Assembly: GCA_000320545.1 (NCBI GenBank) | Contig: ADNK01000778.1 | Span: 62,001-126,000, forward strand | DNA from: Bigelowiella natans CCMP2755 | Lineage: Eukaryota > Protista > Cercozoa | Length of the DNA: 64,000 nt | Reading direction: 5' to 3' | In this document: in pieces, positions 50 through 57,622 of the stretch | Layout of the letters: each line of letters begins with the position of its first letter | How positions within the stretch are numbered: position 1 is the stretch's first letter | The notes under the pieces: model-generated | Told to the model about the DNA's origin: nothing | The model's database searches: none | What the model saw: only the letters and a program-made list of their open reading frames with translations | Program-made: the position numbers and the translations under genes

Positions 50-5643
<5,594 letters not shown>

Positions 5644-50728: not shown

Positions 50729-51748
50729 ATGCGTACTTTGCTCATCCTCACCGTATTTACGGCTCAGGCCTATAGCGTACTGAATGCTCAGGCACAACAT
50801 GCAGTTATCGCTGGAAGGCACGTAGGGAAATTTAAGACAAAAAAAGAGGCTGTAGTCATCGTAGGCGCTAGATTCGGTGAGGTTCCTCAAAGGACCATCG
50901 CCATGCTGGAGAAGCTAGATCGTGATCACTTCGCTCCGTTTTTATTCTATGACGGAGATGTAAGGAACATTACTGATTGGCTTCCAAATACATCATTTCC
51001 ACAACTCCCCATGCACCGCAGAAAAGAAATGACTTTCCTGAAACAAGCATATAGAAGATTTAGCGGCATGTGGAAGTGCCCATCAAAACCCTTTCAAACT
51101 CGATGGCTGGCATCGCAAAACGATTTTGATCGCGCATGGTTCATTGAAGAGGATGTTTACTTCAACGTAATACTAATACCCATTTACTCATGGTTTTCGT
51201 CCTGGCAGCACGCACAGCAACAGTCTCATTTGTTCTTTTTTGTTCGAATTAATAGGGCAACTGGAACAAATTTCTCAAAAGCTTACACAAACGACGACTC
51301 CGATCTACTTGCTTGTGGCTTCAGGTACAATACAAATAATCCTAGAAAAGATCCTTTAGTAGAGGCATGCGAAGTGTGCCATGGCAAACACGTTCATGGC
51401 TTGATCTCCATCCATCGCCTTTCGAAGAACTTGGCAAGGAAAACCATCAAGACACTACTTGCAAATAAAACCGGCCACCATGAATACTTTATGCCAACTG
51501 TATGCTATCTCGATGGCGAATGTAACCTGAGGACGATTAGTAAAGATAAATGGATTGGGTCATTCCACTTCCGCCCCGCAATAGATCCTTCAAGCATGTA
51601 TAAGGACAAACTCTACCATCCAGTGAAACACTGGATTGAAGCAGATCCAAAACTTGAGCTAGTTGAGGACTATGACGATTTGAAGGAGGAAATAGAAAGG
51701 ACATGGAAGTCAGAACCCATTCAGAAGATTCCTGCAGGATATGAATAG
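50729..51748 (+). CDS. Secreted glycosyltransferase-like protein (GT-A/DUF3405-like); one intron and an apparent 1-nt frameshift
   Basis: Signal peptide MRTLLILTVFTAQAYS. FDRAWFIEEDVYFN|GNW, DDSDLL, IHRLSKNL, GHHEYFMPTVC and LYHPVK resemble the WxxExDVxFxGxW...RLS...E...PT...HPVK pattern. GT-AG intron at 51167-51255. Confidence 0.6.
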   Translation: MRTLLILTVFTAQAYSVLNAQAQHAVIAGRHVGKFKTKKEAVVIVGARFGEVPQRTIAMLEKLDRDHFAPFLFYDGDVRNITDWLPNTSFPQLPMHRRKEMTFLKQAYRRFSGMWKCPSKPFQTRWLASQNDFDRAWFIEEDVYFNVILIPIYSWFSSWQHAQQQSHLFFFVRINRATGTNFSKAYTNDDSDLLACGFRYNTNNPRKDPLVEACEVCHGKHVHGLISIHRLSKNLARKTIKTLLANKTGHHEYFMPTVCYLDGECNLRTISKDKWIGSFHFRPAIDPSSMYKDKLYHPVKHWIEADPKLELVEDYDDLKEEIERTWKSEPIQKIPAGYE

Positions 51749-52363
51749 ATCGTATCGTAAGCTGGTCATGTACGTGGTGTCGTTCGTGGATACTGACTAC
51801 CGCACATCAATCTAAACACAGTGCTTTATAGCATCTAGCATAGGGCTCGCAATATTAAAGTATGCAAGGAAAAGTAGCGGCACAGGCCCAATAATGCTAA
51901 TTCTGGAATTTTGGCACAGCGTCTATTATTTAAGCATTTTGTGTATCGTAAATGTCGTGCATATCGTAGTGTATGTACATTTTTTTTTGCATCGGATCTC
52001 ACATCGCAGCTAATGCAATTATTGCTTGTGTGGCACCGCACGCTTGCGTATTTGCAAGCACATGTCATAGAGATCCATGCGATGTTGGTAAATGTTGTGA
52101 ATCATCGACCAATTTTATAAATGCAATGTGTCATGGATTTAAGATGTTATATCAACATGCACGCTGCACAGCTAGTCGTCATGTAGCTGTAGTGCAACAA
52201 TGCCGCCAATTGAGCAACGTTTAACAATTCTACATCATTGGTGTCATGTGCTAGCTAGCTACCGCTAGGCCGAAAGCGACACGACAACCACATGATCAGA
52301 TAACTTTCTTCATCAAATGTTGCTTTCGCAGCACTACACGTTCGTGATTATTCACAATAATTC

Positions 52364-54680
52364 TCAATCAAATCTAGCGACAACACATGTGATGTCATCA
52401 TGGTAGGCCTTGTTTGTCTTGAGGTCCCACATCTTACGTGCTTCTTCAACCAGGGTTTCTCCTCCCTGCAACGCATACGATTATTGTGATACACGGTAAA
52501 CGATTCCAAGATTGGAATATCTAAACATCTTTCTCTATGGCAAACCTTCGAGATCTCGCCAAGATTACGGTAAAGAATACGAGCAACTGTTGAATTGGAG
52601 AGCCACTCCCAAATACCTATGCAGCAGTGTGCGAAACAGAGATATTGGGAGTGTTTACAAGTGCTATGCGATATGCCTCCACATACATTTGCACGAGTTG
52701 CATGTACGCATGAACGTAGTACCGTCTGATGCCCACACAACGAATAAGTCGGAGCTGGTAAGTTCATGAGATTTGAATTCAGGGATGGCTTTAAGACCTA
52801 AGATGATGATGATGATGATGATGATGATGATAACGACGCGAAAAACCTTCAAATAACTATTTTGAGATCAGTCGCAATACCAATTCCTTCTCCCCAGAAG
52901 TCACCAACAGTGCGCGTAACAGCCAACCCAGGGAAATCAGCATATCGCGGAAGCACACGCATCGGTTGGTTCGGTCCAAGCTTGGCACACCTATTATTTC
53001 GTGTAGTGATTATCGATAATGCTTATAGAGCTATTCTCTTCTGATCTCTCACCTGCCTCCGGAGGTAATTATTCTCTCCCTCTCTGAAGGGTCAGTAGGC
53101 TTATGATCACGCGACAGGGGAAGCGAAGATAGGGTGCCTACCATACCACCGTCTCCCTCTTCTTTACCATCCTCATTTTTCTTCTTCTTTCTCATCACTT
53201 TACGAATCAGCACCGCGCGTGAGTCCCCGACGTTTGCGGTGTGGAGAACGTCGCCAACTCGCAGCGAAACGCACATCGTTGTTCCTGTTCATAGATAGCA
53301 GTTATGTGTTTGCTCTGCTGCTGCTGCTGCTGCTGCATCTGCGAAGCGTTGCACTTACATTCATATATCATAGTGGCGCGAACATGTCCAAAGCTCCATT
53401 CAGAGGGGAGGGGCGTCAATGTATGTACATAGTTGTGTGTGTGTGTGTGTTTATAATTTATCACCAGAAGTGCTGACGTCGAATCTTGGCGTCTTGGATT
53501 TGTCCTGGGACTTGCCGTTTGCCTGCACTGTTTTGAGTTCCGCAATGACTCTGCTGATCATCTCCTTGATCAAAGGCTTCGGATCCACCTTCACAACAAA
53601 CAAACAAACAACAACGGCACGCAGCAGCGTCCAACACCATCACAATCGAATTCAACGCAAAATGAAGTCAGTAGAATGATATATCGGTCATCGATCTTCT
53701 TTCGACTCCAAACGAACGCCACGCTAATCTCTACTACTACTACTACTAATGATGATAATGATCATGACCATGATGATAGTCTCACAGCAGCAGCAGAATG
53801 ATAATTGCGTGGGTATAAATCTACCCTAAATTTCTGCTCTTTATCCGCCTTGACAAGATCCGCAAGAATGTCGGGGAGAAGGCTCTTGACGTACTCTGAC
53901 ACCTCGTGACCGTCATCGCCATGGCCATCAAGAACACCGAACATGTCCACGTCTTCCAGCCCAGCGATATTCCGAATGATAATACCACGATCCTGTGAAA
54001 CAACGAAATGATGACGACAACGACGACGATGACGACGATGATGATAATTGATGAATAACACGTGAAGCAGTAGTAGTAGTGGTAGTAGTAGGAAGTAGCG
54101 CTAATAGTAGAAGTCATTATAATCAGGAAGGAGGAGAGAAAAGAGTTCTCTCCTCCCTCCCTCCCTCCCTCCCTCCCTCCTCGATGATAAAAAAGCAATC
54201 CTTCGTTACCTGATTTCGCTTACGTTTGGTGGGGTCTGTCTTGTTTGCCATGAAGCCTGCACGCGTACACAGGGAGGTTGCGATGCCGCCATGTCCTTGT
54301 CCACCGCCTTCACCACCTCCATGACGCACAAAGATGTGAGCTGCTTCGATGAGTTTCAGCTGTCTCAACTGAGGCAACATGATCTTCACTTTGGAGGCGT
54401 CTGGTGCTGCTGGTTGGAAGATGACCCCCGCGGTCATGATCTACAAACAATGGTATTATTCGGAAGCAAAGAGGCGTCTGTTAAGTCACGTAGAACGACA
54501 AGAGAGGAGTTATTGTTGAAGGGGGAACAGCGGCGGAACCAAGAAAATCTAGGCATCCTCTTCCTCCTCCTCCTCCTCCTCATAATCATCATATTCATCA
54601 TGCAGCTATTGGCATAGCTGCGCTTCGCTCCAATCCTCCATTTTCACAAGCACGCCCTCCGGAAATAGTAATCTATAACA

Positions 54681-54720
<40 letters not shown>

Positions 54721-55613
54721 GCATGAACCTTCTGTTCTGTGAGCCAGACCCACACCTCATCGGACTTCTTAAGCGACGAAAGATCATCAGGTGTTTTCTT
54801 CAGCTTGACCAGATGCTCAACCTTGGCTTTGAATTCGTTGGTGCCGGACCTCGTGTTGATGGGCTTCACAAGTACCATAGTCGAAGAGGAGGAACCTTTA
54901 GACTCCTCGTCGTTGCTTCCAGCGATTACTTCGCAGGGAGATGGACCAGCACTTGTCAGCTTGGAGTCTGAAATGATGATGATTGAAGATGAGGATGATG
55001 ATGATGATGATGGGGGTGATGAGGATGGGGATACGTGGGGGAGGCAGATAGATAATCGATATTGAAATTAACGATTTCACAATTGAATAATAATAATAGA
55101 AATTAAATGGGGAGGGGGAGGAAGCGGTGGAAAGTTTTTATTTCAGGCGGAGTTGATGCTGCAGTGGCAGCTGTACATAAAGTTTGAAAATGACAGTTCA
55201 ATATAGGAAGAACATGCACAGATCAACGTCTCATCACTGTCATCCTTTAGCTCCTCCTCTTTATCCTCTTCTCCCTTTTCTGTTCTTCTTACCGAATAAA
55301 ACTTTATCTCCGACAGTGAAAGATTCTTGCTCCTCGATGTCCACTTGCTCCTCTCCCTCCTCCAACGCATCAGCAGCATCTGCAGAAGTAGAAGTAGCAG
55401 TTCCACTGTCACCCTGCTGTTGCGATCCTGCTCCGCCTCCCTGCTGCTGCTTCTCCTCTTCCTTGGCCTTCTCCTCCTCACCTTCTCCCTTTTTCATCGT
55501 TTCGCTGGCAGTGTTTGCAGCTGCTGCTGCTTGTTGGGCTCCCCCTTCCACAGCCCTGCTATGTCGCATAATGATACGAATTAGGAACAAGAAGAGACTC
55601 TATATCTGGGAGT

Positions 55614-55646
<33 letters not shown>

Positions 55647-55922
55647 CCAGAGGAGGTGATGTTGCTGGTGATTTAAGGGTTGTTATTACATTTGCGAGGC
55701 CTGCTCCTCAGGTATGTTCATTCGAATGTACGCACGCTCTAGCTTCTCCTCGTTGCCGTAGCCTGAGTACTTTACCAGGTACCTTGGAGGAAAGAATACG
55801 GAAGAGGGGGAAGGAGGGGAGAGGTATGACGAGCACGGCTTTAAAAAGGTGGTGGTTCCTCAGATACACCAATCGAGATCAGTAGAAGGTGATGAGGGTT
55901 GATGCTGATGTAATTACGTGAA

Positions 55923-55955
<33 letters not shown>

Positions 55956-57096
55956 CTGAATGGGTGCTCCTTGACATCGGGAGCCTTCTCTATTTCGATG
56001 ATCTCGCATGGGTACCTTGGCCACAAAATTATTGTTCAGTCCGCTCATTCTCCTGCGCACAGCACAATACTCCCACCACCGCAACCACCACCTCACCCTC
56101 ACTGCGTGCGTGCATATGCAGAGCGAAATATTACCAAATCTTGTCAACTTGGAATTGCCCAAAGCAGATTGTTCCCAGCTCCAGCATCTCAGACAATGGC
56201 GGTTCTTTTCGTTTTTCCCCTTGATGGTAGGCGGTGGACACAACTTGGCCATCCTTCATAGTCACACGGTGATAATCACCACTTTGTTCGGTGGGAACGC
56301 CATCCTCCCACGCGCGCCGAGTGCTGGTAGTAAGGATCACAGTGCCGTCTCGCTTTGCCATGGCCTTTCTATATGCTACCATCTGAACATCAAAAGAAAG
56401 AGGAGAGGGGGTGGGTAGCGTGGAGTCTTAGACCGTTTGATATCTATACGTCATGCACAACAAAGCGACGACGCAATGTTGTCATTCAGGGCTTTAAAAA
56501 AACGTGAAGAGCCGCAAATGAATACCTCCAGCTTTGTCATGATTCCCATGCGAGTGTGCTCTTCTTCGTTTCCGTACTTCGGATAACGAACGAGGTAGCT
56601 GGTTATTTTGATCGGAGCACACCCAAGTTAATGACCAATTGATGCGAAAACATAAGTAATATATAATTGGGTTGGATCATATTTACAGCTACGGCCCATA
56701 ATTCTCGAAACATAGTTAAGTTTTGAACGAAATTACAGTTAGCACACGCCCCCAGTTTGTGTGATGCAAGCTGTGCGCAACGTAAAGCGAACATTATGGT
56801 ACCTAAAGCCGCCGTCTTTATTAGAGGCTGGTTCAGCATGAACGACCACAGCCTCATACCATTGCCCGTTTCCCGAATACTTAGCAAAGCATTGAGTTCC
56901 CGGACGAATGAAACTCTGCCGACATCAGATTACGATGAGCGTTATTACACATTATATGATTGGGAAGGACACGAGTATAAAATACCAAATTGCTCAACGA
57001 ATATAGCTCGCATACGCGCCTTCGTACCTTAGAGCGCTTAATTTTTGGTTCCTCGGGCTGAAGATTCCCCCCCAAGGGTCGCTTCGTGCTGGCCAT
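52364..57096 (-). CDS. PP2C/PPM protein phosphatase with N-terminal NLS, two SMN-type Tudor domains and two further Tudor-like barrels
   Basis: Phase-consistent exons: MASTKRPLGGNLQPEEPKIKRSK|SFIRPGTQCFAKYSGNGQWYEAVVV..GFS|YLVRYPKYGNEE..; ICFGQFQVDKIW|YPCEII..FR|YLVKYSGYGNEE. PP2C motifs NQDR, FGVLDGHG, ANVGDSRA, SRDHKP, GLAVTRTVGD, WASDGIWE, HDDITCVV. Confidence 0.9.
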
Positions 57097-57622
57097 CTCT
57101 CACGCACAGTTCTGCTCGCTGTCAAAGCTTAGGAATTCCGAATTTCAGATAAATTATTTTAGATATTATCACAATAAAAACATGGTTCTTCGACGAAGTA
57201 CGGCCCACACAAAATTCGCTTTCCGACCGAAGGAATCTTGAAGCCAAACGATGTAGATAAGCGAGAAACATCTATCGAAAGATTGTCTGACTAGGGTGTC
57301 CTACGACAACAAGTCGCGACAGGCAAATCTGGAATGTCGGAAGATAAAAATCACCAGAAGCCCGCATAATTTGTTGCAGATTGTTCCACGAGCTTTTTCC
57401 CCTTCGTCATCTTGCACTAGAGTACCTATTCTTACGATGTATTTGGCTGTTACATGTAGTTTCAGACTGCTTCTAAGGAAAGAGGCGATCATAAAATAGA
57501 ATCCGACTTACATGAAAACATTATTTTTGATACGTAAATATCGTAATATAAGTGTCTAATTTACAACATCTGCACTCTCTGTCATCAAAGAGAAGCAGCG
57601 CAAATAATACGCCCCCCTCTCC
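57097..57622. promoter_or_regulatory. Putative bidirectional promoter (Tudor-PP2C / ARL5)
   Basis: Divergent start codons 526 bp apart. Confidence 0.5.

What the first reader, a model, noticed from the sequence alone, without database searches (positions are those of the whole stretch)
52364..57096. Nuclear multi-Tudor PP2C fusion: a possible methyl-arginine-reading phosphatase hidden by introns
Seen: exons 57096-57028, 56915-56803, 56598-56526, 56382-56135, 56015-55956 and 55782 onward splice in phase. They encode a bipartite NLS-like KRP..KIKRSK and two Tudor domains (CFAKYSGNGQWYEA..YLVRYPKYGNEE; CFGQFQVDKIWYPC..YLVKYSGYGNEE). Two more Tudor/SH3-like barrels follow (FTVGDKVLFD..; LKKSDEVWVW..), then a PP2C domain with its metal-binding Asp motifs intact. 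The ORF track does not show this. Known: the aromatic-cage pattern W/Y/F..Y..Y-x-x-Y-G-N-x-E is that of SMN/SPF30/TDRD3 Tudors, which bind dimethyl-arginine, and in animals a separate PP2C (PPM1G) dephosphorylates the SMN complex. Inference: reader and eraser are fused in one protein, coupling Arg-methyl recognition (Sm proteins, histones, Pol II CTD) to dephosphorylation in a very intron-rich nucleus. I know of no described protein with this architecture.
Basis: partly seen in the sequence, partly recalled or inferred. Interest (0 to 1): 0.85.

Follow-up and report, generated by a model that had tools for sequence, protein, structure and literature searches.

The report
Two-Tudor PP2C phosphatase fusion, Bigelowiella
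A 16-exon Bigelowiella natans gene, confirmed by spliced transcripts, fuses two SMN/TDRD3-type Tudor "methyl-arginine reader" domains to an intact PP2C protein phosphatase; public databases list the protein only as a PP2C, three chlorarachniophyte genera have it, and I found no paper on it.

Summary
On the minus strand, 57096-52364, sixteen exons with fifteen GT..AG introns join in phase. Spliced contigs from two studies carry the Tudor and PP2C exons on one molecule, so the "two genes" refutation fails. The genome is Bigelowiella natans.

The product is already public: 756 aa from a JGI transcript contig and 757 aa as gene model Bigna1/131538. Both are annotated with PP2C only. Orthologues exist in Amorphochlora and Lotharella.

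- **Tudor domains.** Residues 27-82 and 152-208 are homologous repeats (hhalign 98%). The four aromatic cage residues and the Asn of TDRD3/SMN are kept. Tudor 2 in the model matches TDRD3 (Z 9.8) and SMN (Z 9.5).
- **PP2C.** Residues 437-756 match Pfam at 9e-31 and PPM1K at Z 26.8. The metal-binding Asp residues are present.
- **Third and fourth barrels.** Barrel 4 looks Tudor/SH3-like (Z about 6), barrel 3 is poorly modelled, and neither has a cage or a sequence match.
- **Paralogue.** A second B. natans protein, Bigna1/85133, also joins two Tudors to a PP2C.

Methyl-arginine-guided dephosphorylation is plausible but untested. I rate this a new variant of known kinds and of moderate interest. 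The scan earlier noted a different Tudor fusion gene elsewhere in this genome.

The parts
52158..57135 (-). Transcribed span of the gene (short 5'UTR, 16 exons, about 200 nt of 3'UTR)
   Evidence: Depth and contig pieces: depth is zero from bin 57136 up, and X13 record 2 reaches 52158. An in-frame TGA lies two codons upstream of the ATG.
57028..57096 (-). Exon 1, residues 1-23, with the bipartite NLS-like motif KR-x11-KIKRSK (57084-57028)
   Evidence: K5 and R6 and the basic cluster are kept in Amorphochlora and Lotharella. There is no hydrophobic signal peptide.
56535..56906 (-). Tudor 1 (residues 27-82; exons 2 and 3 with intron 2). Cage Y36, Y43, Y66, Y69 and N71
   Evidence: PDB sequence hits are TDRD3 (E 0.006-0.017), TDRD1 and SPF30, and every cage position aligns (cage residues from PMC3281842). 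pLDDT is 72-84 with five strands. VIA gives Z 8.2 to the MRG701 chromo barrel. The orthologue P0092 passes the Pfam TUDOR cut-off.
55722..56184 (-). Tudor 2 (residues 152-208; end of exon 4, exon 5, exon 6, with introns 4 and 5). Cage F162, Y169, Y193, Y196 and N198
   Evidence: hhalign of Tudor 1 against Tudor 2 profiles gives 98.1%, E 8e-14. VIA gives TDRD3 Z 9.8 (rmsd 2.0, 60/60), SMN1 Z 9.5 (rmsd 1.7, 57/58) and Tbtudor Z 9.5. The cage is conserved in three genera.
55293..55555 (-). Exon 7: low-complexity acidic and Gln/Ala-rich linker (residues 219-297) and the first strand of barrel 3. The acceptor is a NAGNAG (55558 or 55555)
   Evidence: pLDDT is below 50.
54804..55320 (-). Putative barrel 3 (residues 298-361; exons 7/8 with intron 7)
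   Evidence: Four predicted strands, but pLDDT is only 44-58. Only tandem-barrel structures such as SHH1 SAWADEE span it (Z 6.5). No Pfam, Atlas or profile hit.
54324..54767 (-). Barrel 4 (residues 374-425; exons 8/9 with intron 8): Tudor/SH3-like small beta-barrel without an aromatic cage
   Evidence: Five strands at pLDDT 74-78. VIA gives TDRD3 Tudor Z 5.8 (rmsd 2.1, 60/60), with PHF19, MTF2, LBR and SMN Tudors at Z 4.4-5.2. MAFFT aligns it with the second Tudor of paralogue P0020, but hhalign gives only E 0.024.
52367..54290 (-). PP2C/PPM catalytic domain (residues 437-756; exons 9-16)
   Evidence: Pfam PP2C 9e-31, and exon 12 alone 3.8e-11. Foldseek gives ABI1 4.9e-16 and PPM1K TMt 0.82. 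VIA gives PPM1K Z 26.8, rmsd 2.6 over 251 residues. The motifs RKRNQD464, D485-GHG, GDSR, D699-G and D746-D747-IT are invariant in orthologues and aligned to PDB PP2Cs.
52364..52366 (-). Stop codon TGA

Best explanation
This is one nuclear gene of Bigelowiella natans (JGI Bigna1/131538). Its 756-aa product has, in order:
- a conserved bipartite NLS-like N-terminus;
- two canonical SMN/TDRD3-type Tudor domains, each with a complete four-aromatic cage plus the conserved Asn;
- an acidic low-complexity linker;
- one or two degenerate, cage-less Tudor/SH3-like barrels;
- a PP2C (PPM) Ser/Thr phosphatase with its catalytic acid residues in place.

Shown here: the exon structure, the single transcript, the two folds, the conservation of the motifs, and the presence of the same protein in three chlorarachniophyte genera.

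Inferred mechanism: the Tudor pair docks on dimethyl-arginine marks of RG/RGG-rich nuclear proteins, such as Sm proteins, other RNA-binding proteins, histone tails or the Pol II CTD. That docking raises the local concentration of the Mn2+/Mg2+-dependent PP2C domain, which removes phosphates from the marked protein or its neighbours. It would be a cis version of the link seen in animals between the SMN complex and the separate PP2C PPM1G.

The confidence given (0.5) is for the whole statement including the inferred mechanism; for the architecture alone it is about 0.97.
For: - **Gene model and single transcript:**. L001 is a public 2343-nt intronless contig that encodes the whole protein.
- **Identity and orthologues:**
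- **Tudor identity:**
  - Exon-wise Pfam hints fall at the right profile positions.
  - The whole protein scores Tudor-knot 23.7 bits against a cut-off of 20.8, and the Lotharella orthologue scores TUDOR 27.6 against 23.
  - PDB sequence hits for Tudor 1 are almost all Tudor-type or chromo barrel domains, led by TDRD3, TDRD1 and SPF30.
  - The nearest Atlas clusters are nearly all Tudor-clan.
  - Tudor 1 and Tudor 2 are homologous.
  - Structural matches to TDRD3 and SMN reach Z 9.5-9.8 over the whole domain.
- **Cage:** the residues align with TDRD3 Y566/Y573/F591/Y594/N596 (with PMC3281842).
- **PP2C:**
- **Paralogue:** B. natans P0020 also joins two Tudors to a PP2C (SMN_Tudor 25.1 bits against a cut-off of 22.7; SPF30 E 2.7e-4). 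It is the closest PP2C paralogue in the genome. The combination is therefore retained, not accidental.
- **Animal parallel:** PPM1G acts on the SMN complex in animals (PMC4294665).
Against: - No binding, activity or localisation data exist.
- Each Tudor on its own is below Pfam cut-offs. It scores no better for SMN_Tudor than for Agenet or Tudor-knot, which are families of chromatin methyl-lysine readers.
- Tudor 2 alone has no PDB sequence hit.
- The AF2 model rests on five sequences (mean pLDDT 56.7), so the cage geometry is not established.
- The first acid of the R-x-x-x-E-D motif is Gln (NQD).
- The check for a PRMT5 in the genome was not specific.
- The family was found only in chlorarachniophytes.
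Confidence: 0.5

Rival explanations
1. The architecture is the same, but the Tudors read methyl-lysine on histones. The protein would be a chromatin-targeted PP2C, for instance one that erases histone or chromatin-protein phosphorylation next to a methyl mark.
For: For each Tudor alone, Pfam scores Agenet and Tudor-knot at least as high as SMN_Tudor. Tudor 1 in the model matches the MRG701 chromo barrel (Z 8.2), and Tudor 2 also matches SAWADEE, LBR, ARID4B and MRG15. A Chromo-PP2C fusion exists elsewhere (P0154). SMN Tudor itself has been reported to read H3K79me1 (title of PMC9993015, seen).
Against: The Y-x-x-Y-G-N motif with four aromatics and the Asn is the signature of the methyl-arginine binders TDRD3, SMN, SPF30 and SND1 (PMC3281842). 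The best sequence hits and the best structural hits are TDRD3 and SMN.
Confidence: 0.2
2. The Tudor domains are methylation-independent protein- or RNA-binding scaffolds, for example for condensate or oligomer formation. The PP2C acts on substrates chosen by other means.
For: Many Tudor-fold domains have no methyl ligand. Barrels 3 and 4 lack cages. The long acidic low-complexity linker suggests condensate behaviour.
Against: All ten cage positions (4 aromatic + Asn, twice) keep an aromatic residue or the Asn across three genera that are only 45-50% identical overall. This argues for selection on the cage.
Confidence: 0.2
3. The PP2C domain is a pseudophosphatase (TAB1-like), and the protein is only an adaptor.
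For: The E of the RxxxED motif is Q in all family members. TAB1 is among the structural matches (Z 23.5).
Against: D464, D485-G486, the GDSR motif, D699 and D746/D747 are invariant and align with catalytic motifs of active PP2Cs. The best matches are active enzymes (PPM1K, PP2CA, PPM1A).
Confidence: 0.05
4. The Tudor exons and the PP2C exons belong to two separate genes, and the fusion is an artefact of annotation or assembly.
For: In run X13 the transcript is assembled as two contigs that break at exon 7.
Against: Single spliced contigs span both parts in X1 and X9, which come from two studies, and in the JGI contig L001. The same fused protein comes from an Amorphochlora transcript contig and an NCBI genome model, and from Lotharella transcriptomes. 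The X13 break coincides with the NAGNAG acceptor.
Confidence: 0.01

Closest known systems
Canonical single Tudor domains of TDRD3, SMN and SPF30/SMNDC1 (methyl-arginine readers)
   Same: A beta-barrel of about 60 aa. Four aromatic cage residues plus the conserved Asn in the Y-G-N motif. The best sequence hits (TDRD3, E 0.006) and the best structural hits (TDRD3 Z 9.8, SMN Z 9.5).
   Different: There are two copies in tandem, separated by about 70 residues. They are fused to a phosphatase rather than to UBA/OB-fold, Gemin2-binding/YG-box or splicing-factor regions. Each copy is below Pfam cut-offs on its own. Ligand binding is untested.
PPM1G (PP2C-gamma), the nuclear PP2C that dephosphorylates the SMN complex in animals
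   Same: A PPM-family catalytic domain with a probable nuclear location. It has a functional connection to a Tudor protein (PMC4294665, citing Petri et al. 2007).
   Different: I did not test whether this PP2C is an orthologue of PPM1G.
B. natans paralogue Bigna1/85133 (P0020) and its Amorphochlora relative P0096
   Same: Tudor domains directly upstream of a PP2C. It is the closest PP2C paralogue in the genome (41% identity).
   Different: It has only two Tudors, at the position of barrels 3 and 4. They are recognisable by sequence (SMN_Tudor above the cut-off) but have imperfect Y-G-N motifs. The N-terminal cage-perfect pair is absent, and the gene is intronless over residues 31-600.
Other PP2Cs that carry a targeting module (the Chromo-PP2C P0154 and the ankyrin-, LRR-, kinase- and FHA-PP2C proteins seen)
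   Same: The same principle: a PPM catalytic domain with an N-terminal recognition module.
   Different: The module is different. None of the closest PP2C relatives outside chlorarachniophytes that I scanned has a Tudor.

Membership tests
PPM / PP2C phosphatases (Pfam PF00481) | Significant match to the family profile over the catalytic domain | tested here: met
   PF00481 E 9e-31, 107.9 bits against a cut-off of 20.3, residues 460-720. Exon 12 alone gives 3.8e-11. 46 PDB PP2C sequences match at E<=1e-5.
PPM / PP2C phosphatases (Pfam PF00481) | PP2C fold (central beta-sandwich flanked by helices) | tested here: met
   VIA gives PPM1K Z 26.8, rmsd 2.6, 251/257 residues. Foldseek gives 4.9e-16 and TMt up to 0.82.
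PPM / PP2C phosphatases (Pfam PF00481) | Metal-binding acidic residues (RxxxED, DGHG, DG, DN/DD motifs) | tested here: met
   R459..Q463-D464, D485-G-H-G, D699-G and D746-D747 are invariant in five family members. The DGHG, GDSR and DG motifs align to those of 2i0o and HAB1. One deviation: Q replaces E before the first Asp.
PPM / PP2C phosphatases (Pfam PF00481) | Mn2+/Mg2+-dependent phosphoserine/threonine hydrolysis | not testable with these tools
   This needs an enzyme assay.
SMN/TDRD3-type canonical Tudor domain (Pfam PF06003/PF00567, Tudor clan) | Profile match above the curated cut-off | tested here: inconclusive
   Tudor 1 and Tudor 2 alone score 12-18 bits for Agenet, Tudor-knot, SMN_Tudor and TUDOR, all below the cut-offs. 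The whole protein scores Tudor-knot 23.7 against 20.8. Orthologue P0092 scores TUDOR 27.6 against 23 and Tudor-knot 23.9 against 20.8.
SMN/TDRD3-type canonical Tudor domain (Pfam PF06003/PF00567, Tudor clan) | Five-stranded beta-barrel of about 60 residues superposable on solved Tudors | tested here: met
   Tudor 2: TDRD3 Z 9.8 (rmsd 2.0, 60/60), SMN1 Z 9.5 (rmsd 1.7, 57/58). Tudor 1: chromo/Tudor barrel Z 8.2. pLDDT is 64-84. Caveat: the alignment behind the model is shallow.
SMN/TDRD3-type canonical Tudor domain (Pfam PF06003/PF00567, Tudor clan) | Four-residue aromatic cage plus the conserved Asn | tested here: met
   Y36/Y43/Y66/Y69/N71 align column by column with TDRD3 Y566/Y573/F591/Y594/N596 (residues from PMC3281842). 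F162/Y169/Y193/Y196/N198 are the equivalents in Tudor 2. All are conserved in three genera.
SMN/TDRD3-type canonical Tudor domain (Pfam PF06003/PF00567, Tudor clan) | Binding of symmetric or asymmetric dimethyl-arginine peptides | not testable with these tools
   This needs ITC, a peptide array or a pull-down.
Tandem Tudor-like barrels (SAWADEE / TTD type) for residues 298-425 | Sequence or profile similarity to Tudor-clan families | tested here: not met
   No Pfam family at E<=10. No usable Atlas hit. hhalign against Tudor 1, Tudor 2 and the paralogue Tudors gives probabilities of 2% or less.
Tandem Tudor-like barrels (SAWADEE / TTD type) for residues 298-425 | Small beta-barrel fold matching Tudor/SH3-like structures | tested here: inconclusive
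   Barrel 4 has pLDDT 74-78 and barrel 3 has 44-58. The best matches are SAWADEE Z 6.5, TDRD3 Z 5.8 and many Tudors at Z 4.3-5.2. All are below the Z 8 that the tool calls informative.
Classical bipartite nuclear localisation signal | KR - spacer of 10-12 residues - basic cluster | tested here: met
   K5-R6, an 11-residue spacer, then K18-I-K-R-S-K23. The pattern is kept in both orthologues. Function is not tested.

The most novel reading that the evidence does not exclude
A natural fusion of a methyl-arginine reader with a PP2C phosphatase. It would be retained in two paralogous forms across chlorarachniophytes and would physically couple arginine methylation to dephosphorylation. It would also serve as a 'Rosetta stone' showing that the Tudor (SMN-type) to PPM link seen in trans in animals (SMN and PPM1G) is a general, ancient functional module of snRNP or RNA-polymerase regulation.
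Probability: 0.3. Interest if true: 0.65.

Novelty: new variant of a known kind. Interest (0 to 1): 0.45.

Why it matters
Cross-talk between arginine methylation and phosphorylation is usually studied as separate readers and enzymes. A conserved single-chain reader-phosphatase would give a direct, testable example of methyl-mark-guided dephosphorylation. Its substrates could be found by pull-down with the Tudor pair. The limits are that the family is so far confined to chlorarachniophytes, that new combinations of common domains are frequent in protists, and that nothing functional has been measured.

Tried and rejected
1. Exon-by-exon Pfam and PDB searches gave only PP2C for exon 12 and weak Tudor hints for exons 2 and 6, because the introns split both Tudors. 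The full-length sequence used later is the public protein P0001 and the public transcript contig L001, both returned by tools.
2. The search for homologous proteins on region 24-218 returned only the query from 179 candidates. It did not even return the known orthologue, so it says nothing about spread.
3. The Atlas search on residues 292-432 gave no usable hit.
4. Tudor 2 alone against PDB sequences gave no Tudor hit.
5. Foldseek on the full model was filled by PP2C chains. VIA-align wide was needed to see the Tudor matches.
6. I scanned ten long PP2C relatives of the paralogue for hidden Tudors and found none.
7. The PRMT5 family search in the genome gave one weak hit. The model also rings in two prokaryote control genomes, so the search is not informative about sDMA in B. 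natans.
8. Literature searches (Tudor domain + PP2C; Bigelowiella + Tudor; phosphatome + Tudor) found no description of such a fusion.
9. The raw-read RNA run X21 gave only 60 reads, mostly at the 3' end, which is too few to quantify expression.


Full report
**Observation.** I read the minus strand of 52000-57400, translated it in three frames and located the splice sites. Sixteen exons result:
- 57096-57028, 56915-56803, 56598-56526, 56382-56135
- 56015-55956, 55782-55690, 55558-55293, 54967-54729
- 54440-54210, 53992-53825, 53588-53465, 53284-53053
- 52990-52881, 52797-52723, 52616-52546, 52465-52364

All fifteen introns are GT..AG and 62-325 nt long. The phases are consistent, and the CDS is 2274 nt.

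**Transcripts.** Twenty public runs hold about 0.31-0.38 of the sampled words of the 4.7-kb stretch, roughly its exonic share. Four runs were laid on 51900-57500.
- Ten of my introns appear in the joints table. Two more (8 and 11) follow from pieces that abut in the contig records.
- Introns 5 and 13 are not in the printed rows. For intron 5 the record coordinates leave exactly the room for exons 5 and 6. All sixteen exon translations lie in the transcript-derived P0001.
- Single spliced contigs of 2312 nt (X1) and 2405 nt (X9), from two studies, carry pieces from exon 4 down to the PP2C exons. The same contig in each run gives the joints of introns 1-3.
- A contig that lacks the introns can only come from spliced RNA, although these runs are only guessed to be RNA.
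- One correction: intron 6 uses the NAGNAG acceptor 3 nt downstream, so exon 7 starts at 55555 and the protein has 756 aa.
- The 3'UTR runs to about 52158, and depth is zero from 57136 upward.

The stated refutation, that the Tudor and PP2C exons are separate genes, therefore fails.

**How the spliced protein was searched.** Exon 12 alone matched PP2C (3.8e-11). Exon 2 matched TUDOR weakly (E 0.27, profile positions 53-75). Exon 6 matched SMN_Tudor weakly (E 0.058, positions 35-54). These are the correct halves of the profile.

A search of the 1.84-billion-protein library with exon 12 returned P0001, 756 aa and 100% identical. All sixteen exon translations lie in it colinearly, one residue apart at each split codon. 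P0001 comes from a public 2343-nt JGI contig, L001, with CDS 22-2292, which is an intronless transcript copy. Domain-level references were taken from L001.

**Identity.** Cluster look-up names the organism as Bigelowiella natans. The 757-aa variant is JGI gene model Bigna1/131538 (EukProt EP00466_P003984). The assembly has 91.4 Mb.

Orthologues:
- Amorphochlora amoebiformis GAB5362068.1, 709 aa, 45% identity over 98% of the query.
- Lotharella globosa A0A7S3YQ64 (758 aa) and A0A7S4DM74 (736 aa).

Their names are only 'hypothetical protein' or 'PPM-type phosphatase domain-containing protein', and the precomputed Pfam is PP2C alone. The gene is therefore not hidden from public annotation, but its reader half is unannotated.

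**PP2C.**
- Pfam PF00481 gives 9e-31 over residues 460-720.
- 46 PDB PP2C sequences match at E<=1e-5, with the DGHG, GDSR and DG motifs aligned.
- Foldseek gives 4.9e-16.
- VIA-align gives Z 26.8 to PPM1K over 437-756.
- R459, D464, D485-G486, D699 and D746/D747 are invariant in the family.
- The only deviation is Gln in place of Glu before D464.

I take this to be an active PPM enzyme. That is inferred, not assayed.

**Tudor 1 (27-82) and Tudor 2 (152-208).**
- Whole-protein Pfam gives Tudor-knot at 23.7 bits, above its 20.8 cut-off. Agenet, TUDOR and SMN_Tudor fall below their cut-offs.
- Each domain alone scores 12-18 bits for the same four Tudor-clan families.
- The Lotharella orthologue passes the TUDOR cut-off (27.6 against 23).
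- Tudor 1 against PDB sequences finds eight TDRD3 Tudor constructs (E 0.006-0.017), then TDRD1, with SPF30 weakly.
- In that alignment Y36, Y43, Y66, Y69 and N71 fall on TDRD3 Y566, Y573, F591, Y594 and N596. These are the cage residues and the conserved Asn described in PMC3281842.
- Tudor 2 has F162, Y169, Y193, Y196 and N198 at the same positions. It is homologous to Tudor 1 (hhalign 98.1%, E 8e-14, on three-genus profiles).
- All ten positions keep an aromatic residue or the Asn in the three genera.
- The nearest Atlas clusters for residues 24-218 are nearly all Tudor-clan, with scores of 0.84-0.89, so this is only a lead.
- In the AF2 model (five sequences, mean pLDDT 56.7, but 64-84 in the two domains), Tudor 2 superposes on TDRD3 (Z 9.8, rmsd 2.0, 60/60), a trypanosome Tudor (Z 9.5) and SMN1 (Z 9.5, rmsd 1.7, 57/58). 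Tudor 1 superposes on a chromo barrel (Z 8.2).
- Both domains carry an intron at the same place and phase. It lies after the second base of the codon between F and the YLV(R/K)Y strand (exons 2/3 and 5/6). This fits a tandem duplication of a unit that already contained the intron.

**Barrels 3 and 4.** The region 290-435 was folded alone.
- Barrel 4 (374-425) has five strands at pLDDT 74-78. Barrel 3 (298-361) reaches only 44-58.
- Structure search gives SHH1 SAWADEE Z 6.5 across both barrels and TDRD3 Tudor Z 5.8 on barrel 4. A long list of Tudor, PWWP, chromo, KOW and SH3 barrels follows at Z 4.2-5.2.
- These matches are consistent in kind but fall below the level the tool calls informative.
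- No Pfam family, Atlas hit or profile similarity to real Tudors was found. The cage positions are not aromatic.
- MAFFT puts the two true Tudors of paralogue P0020 on these barrels. A local SL(K/E)(K/R)SD..VW motif is shared, but hhalign gives only E 0.024.

My reading, at low confidence, is that these are degenerate descendants of an ancestral Tudor pair next to the PP2C.

**Paralogue and spread.**
- P0020 (Bigna1/85133, 622 aa) is the closest PP2C paralogue in the genome (C3619, 41% identity, E 3.5e-51). It is intronless over residues 31-600.
- Its residues 122-245 pass the SMN_Tudor cut-off (25.1 against 22.7). They hit SPF30 (2.7e-4), TDRD3 and Tudor-SN, and, for the second repeat, Drosophila Tudor.
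- P0096 (697 aa, from an NCBI record; organism not looked up) is its full-length relative.
- Other relatives share only the PP2C half. Ten long ones that I scanned have no Tudor.
- One unrelated protein, P0154, is a Chromo-PP2C fusion.
- No N-terminal Tudor-pair copy exists elsewhere in the genome at E<=0.001.

**Mechanism.** Shown: the architecture, the folds, motif conservation, expression as one mRNA, and a conserved KR-x11-KIKRSK bipartite NLS-like start with no signal peptide. Inferred: the cage-bearing Tudor pair binds dimethyl-arginine on RG-rich nuclear proteins and brings the PP2C to phosphosites on them or on their partners.

The animal precedent is the separate nuclear PP2C PPM1G acting on the SMN complex (PMC4294665). 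Rivals are methyl-lysine or chromatin reading, methyl-independent scaffolding, and a pseudophosphatase. The cage signature and the best matches favour methyl-arginine. Pfam cannot tell the sub-families apart, and nothing has been measured.

**Novelty and verdict.** Searches of 8.4 million papers for Tudor domain with PP2C, Bigelowiella with Tudor, and phosphatome with Tudor found no description of such a fusion. Both domains are well known, the protein is already in public sets, and the family is so far confined to chlorarachniophytes. I class this as a new variant of known kinds, with interest 0.45.

Noticed in passing
window 55555-55558 (acceptor of intron 6): NAGNAG acceptor. JGI gene model Bigna1/131538 uses the upstream AG (757 aa). 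The transcript contigs in X1 and X9 and the JGI contig L001 use the downstream AG (756 aa). The X13 assembly breaks exactly here, which may reflect both forms being present.
   Followed up: partly
window 56803/56598 and 55956/55782 (introns 2 and 5): Both Tudor repeats carry an intron at the same position and phase (codon split AG|N between F and YLV(R/K)Y). This suggests the intron predates the Tudor duplication.
   Followed up: partly
window introns, e.g. 55925-55955, 55615-55650, 54680-54712, 54140-54185, 53305-53330, 52800-52832: Almost every intron holds a microsatellite: (GTA)n starting right at the donor of intron 5, then (CTA)n, (GA)n, (GGGA)n, (GCA)n and (CAT)n on the gene (minus) strand.
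   Followed up: no
window 53957-54143: This bin shows very high contig depth and an A>G at 54019. Reads there come from repeats elsewhere, not from this gene.
   Followed up: no
window 50729-51748 (+): A convergent neighbour: an uninterrupted 339-aa ORF with a signal-peptide-like start (MRTLLILTVFTAQAYS...). Run X13 has depth over 51900-52086, between the two genes' 3' ends.
   Followed up: no
L002 (G000:C3619:5500-10500), minus strand, about 1420-3220: Paralogue Bigna1/85133 (P0020) has two sequence-recognisable Tudors followed by PP2C. It is encoded without introns over residues 31-600, in contrast to the 16-exon gene in the window.
   Followed up: partly
protein P0154 (496 aa, Logan assembly; not in the window): A Chromo (PF00385, E 1.4e-12) + PP2C fusion from an unidentified organism. 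It is another methyl-mark reader fused to a PPM phosphatase.
   Followed up: no
G000:C777:69890-70021 and G000:C1335:7365-7496: The two best SMN_Tudor profile hits in the B. natans genome (41.6 and 30 bits) lie in long open frames of 768 and 780 aa. They were not identified.
   Followed up: no
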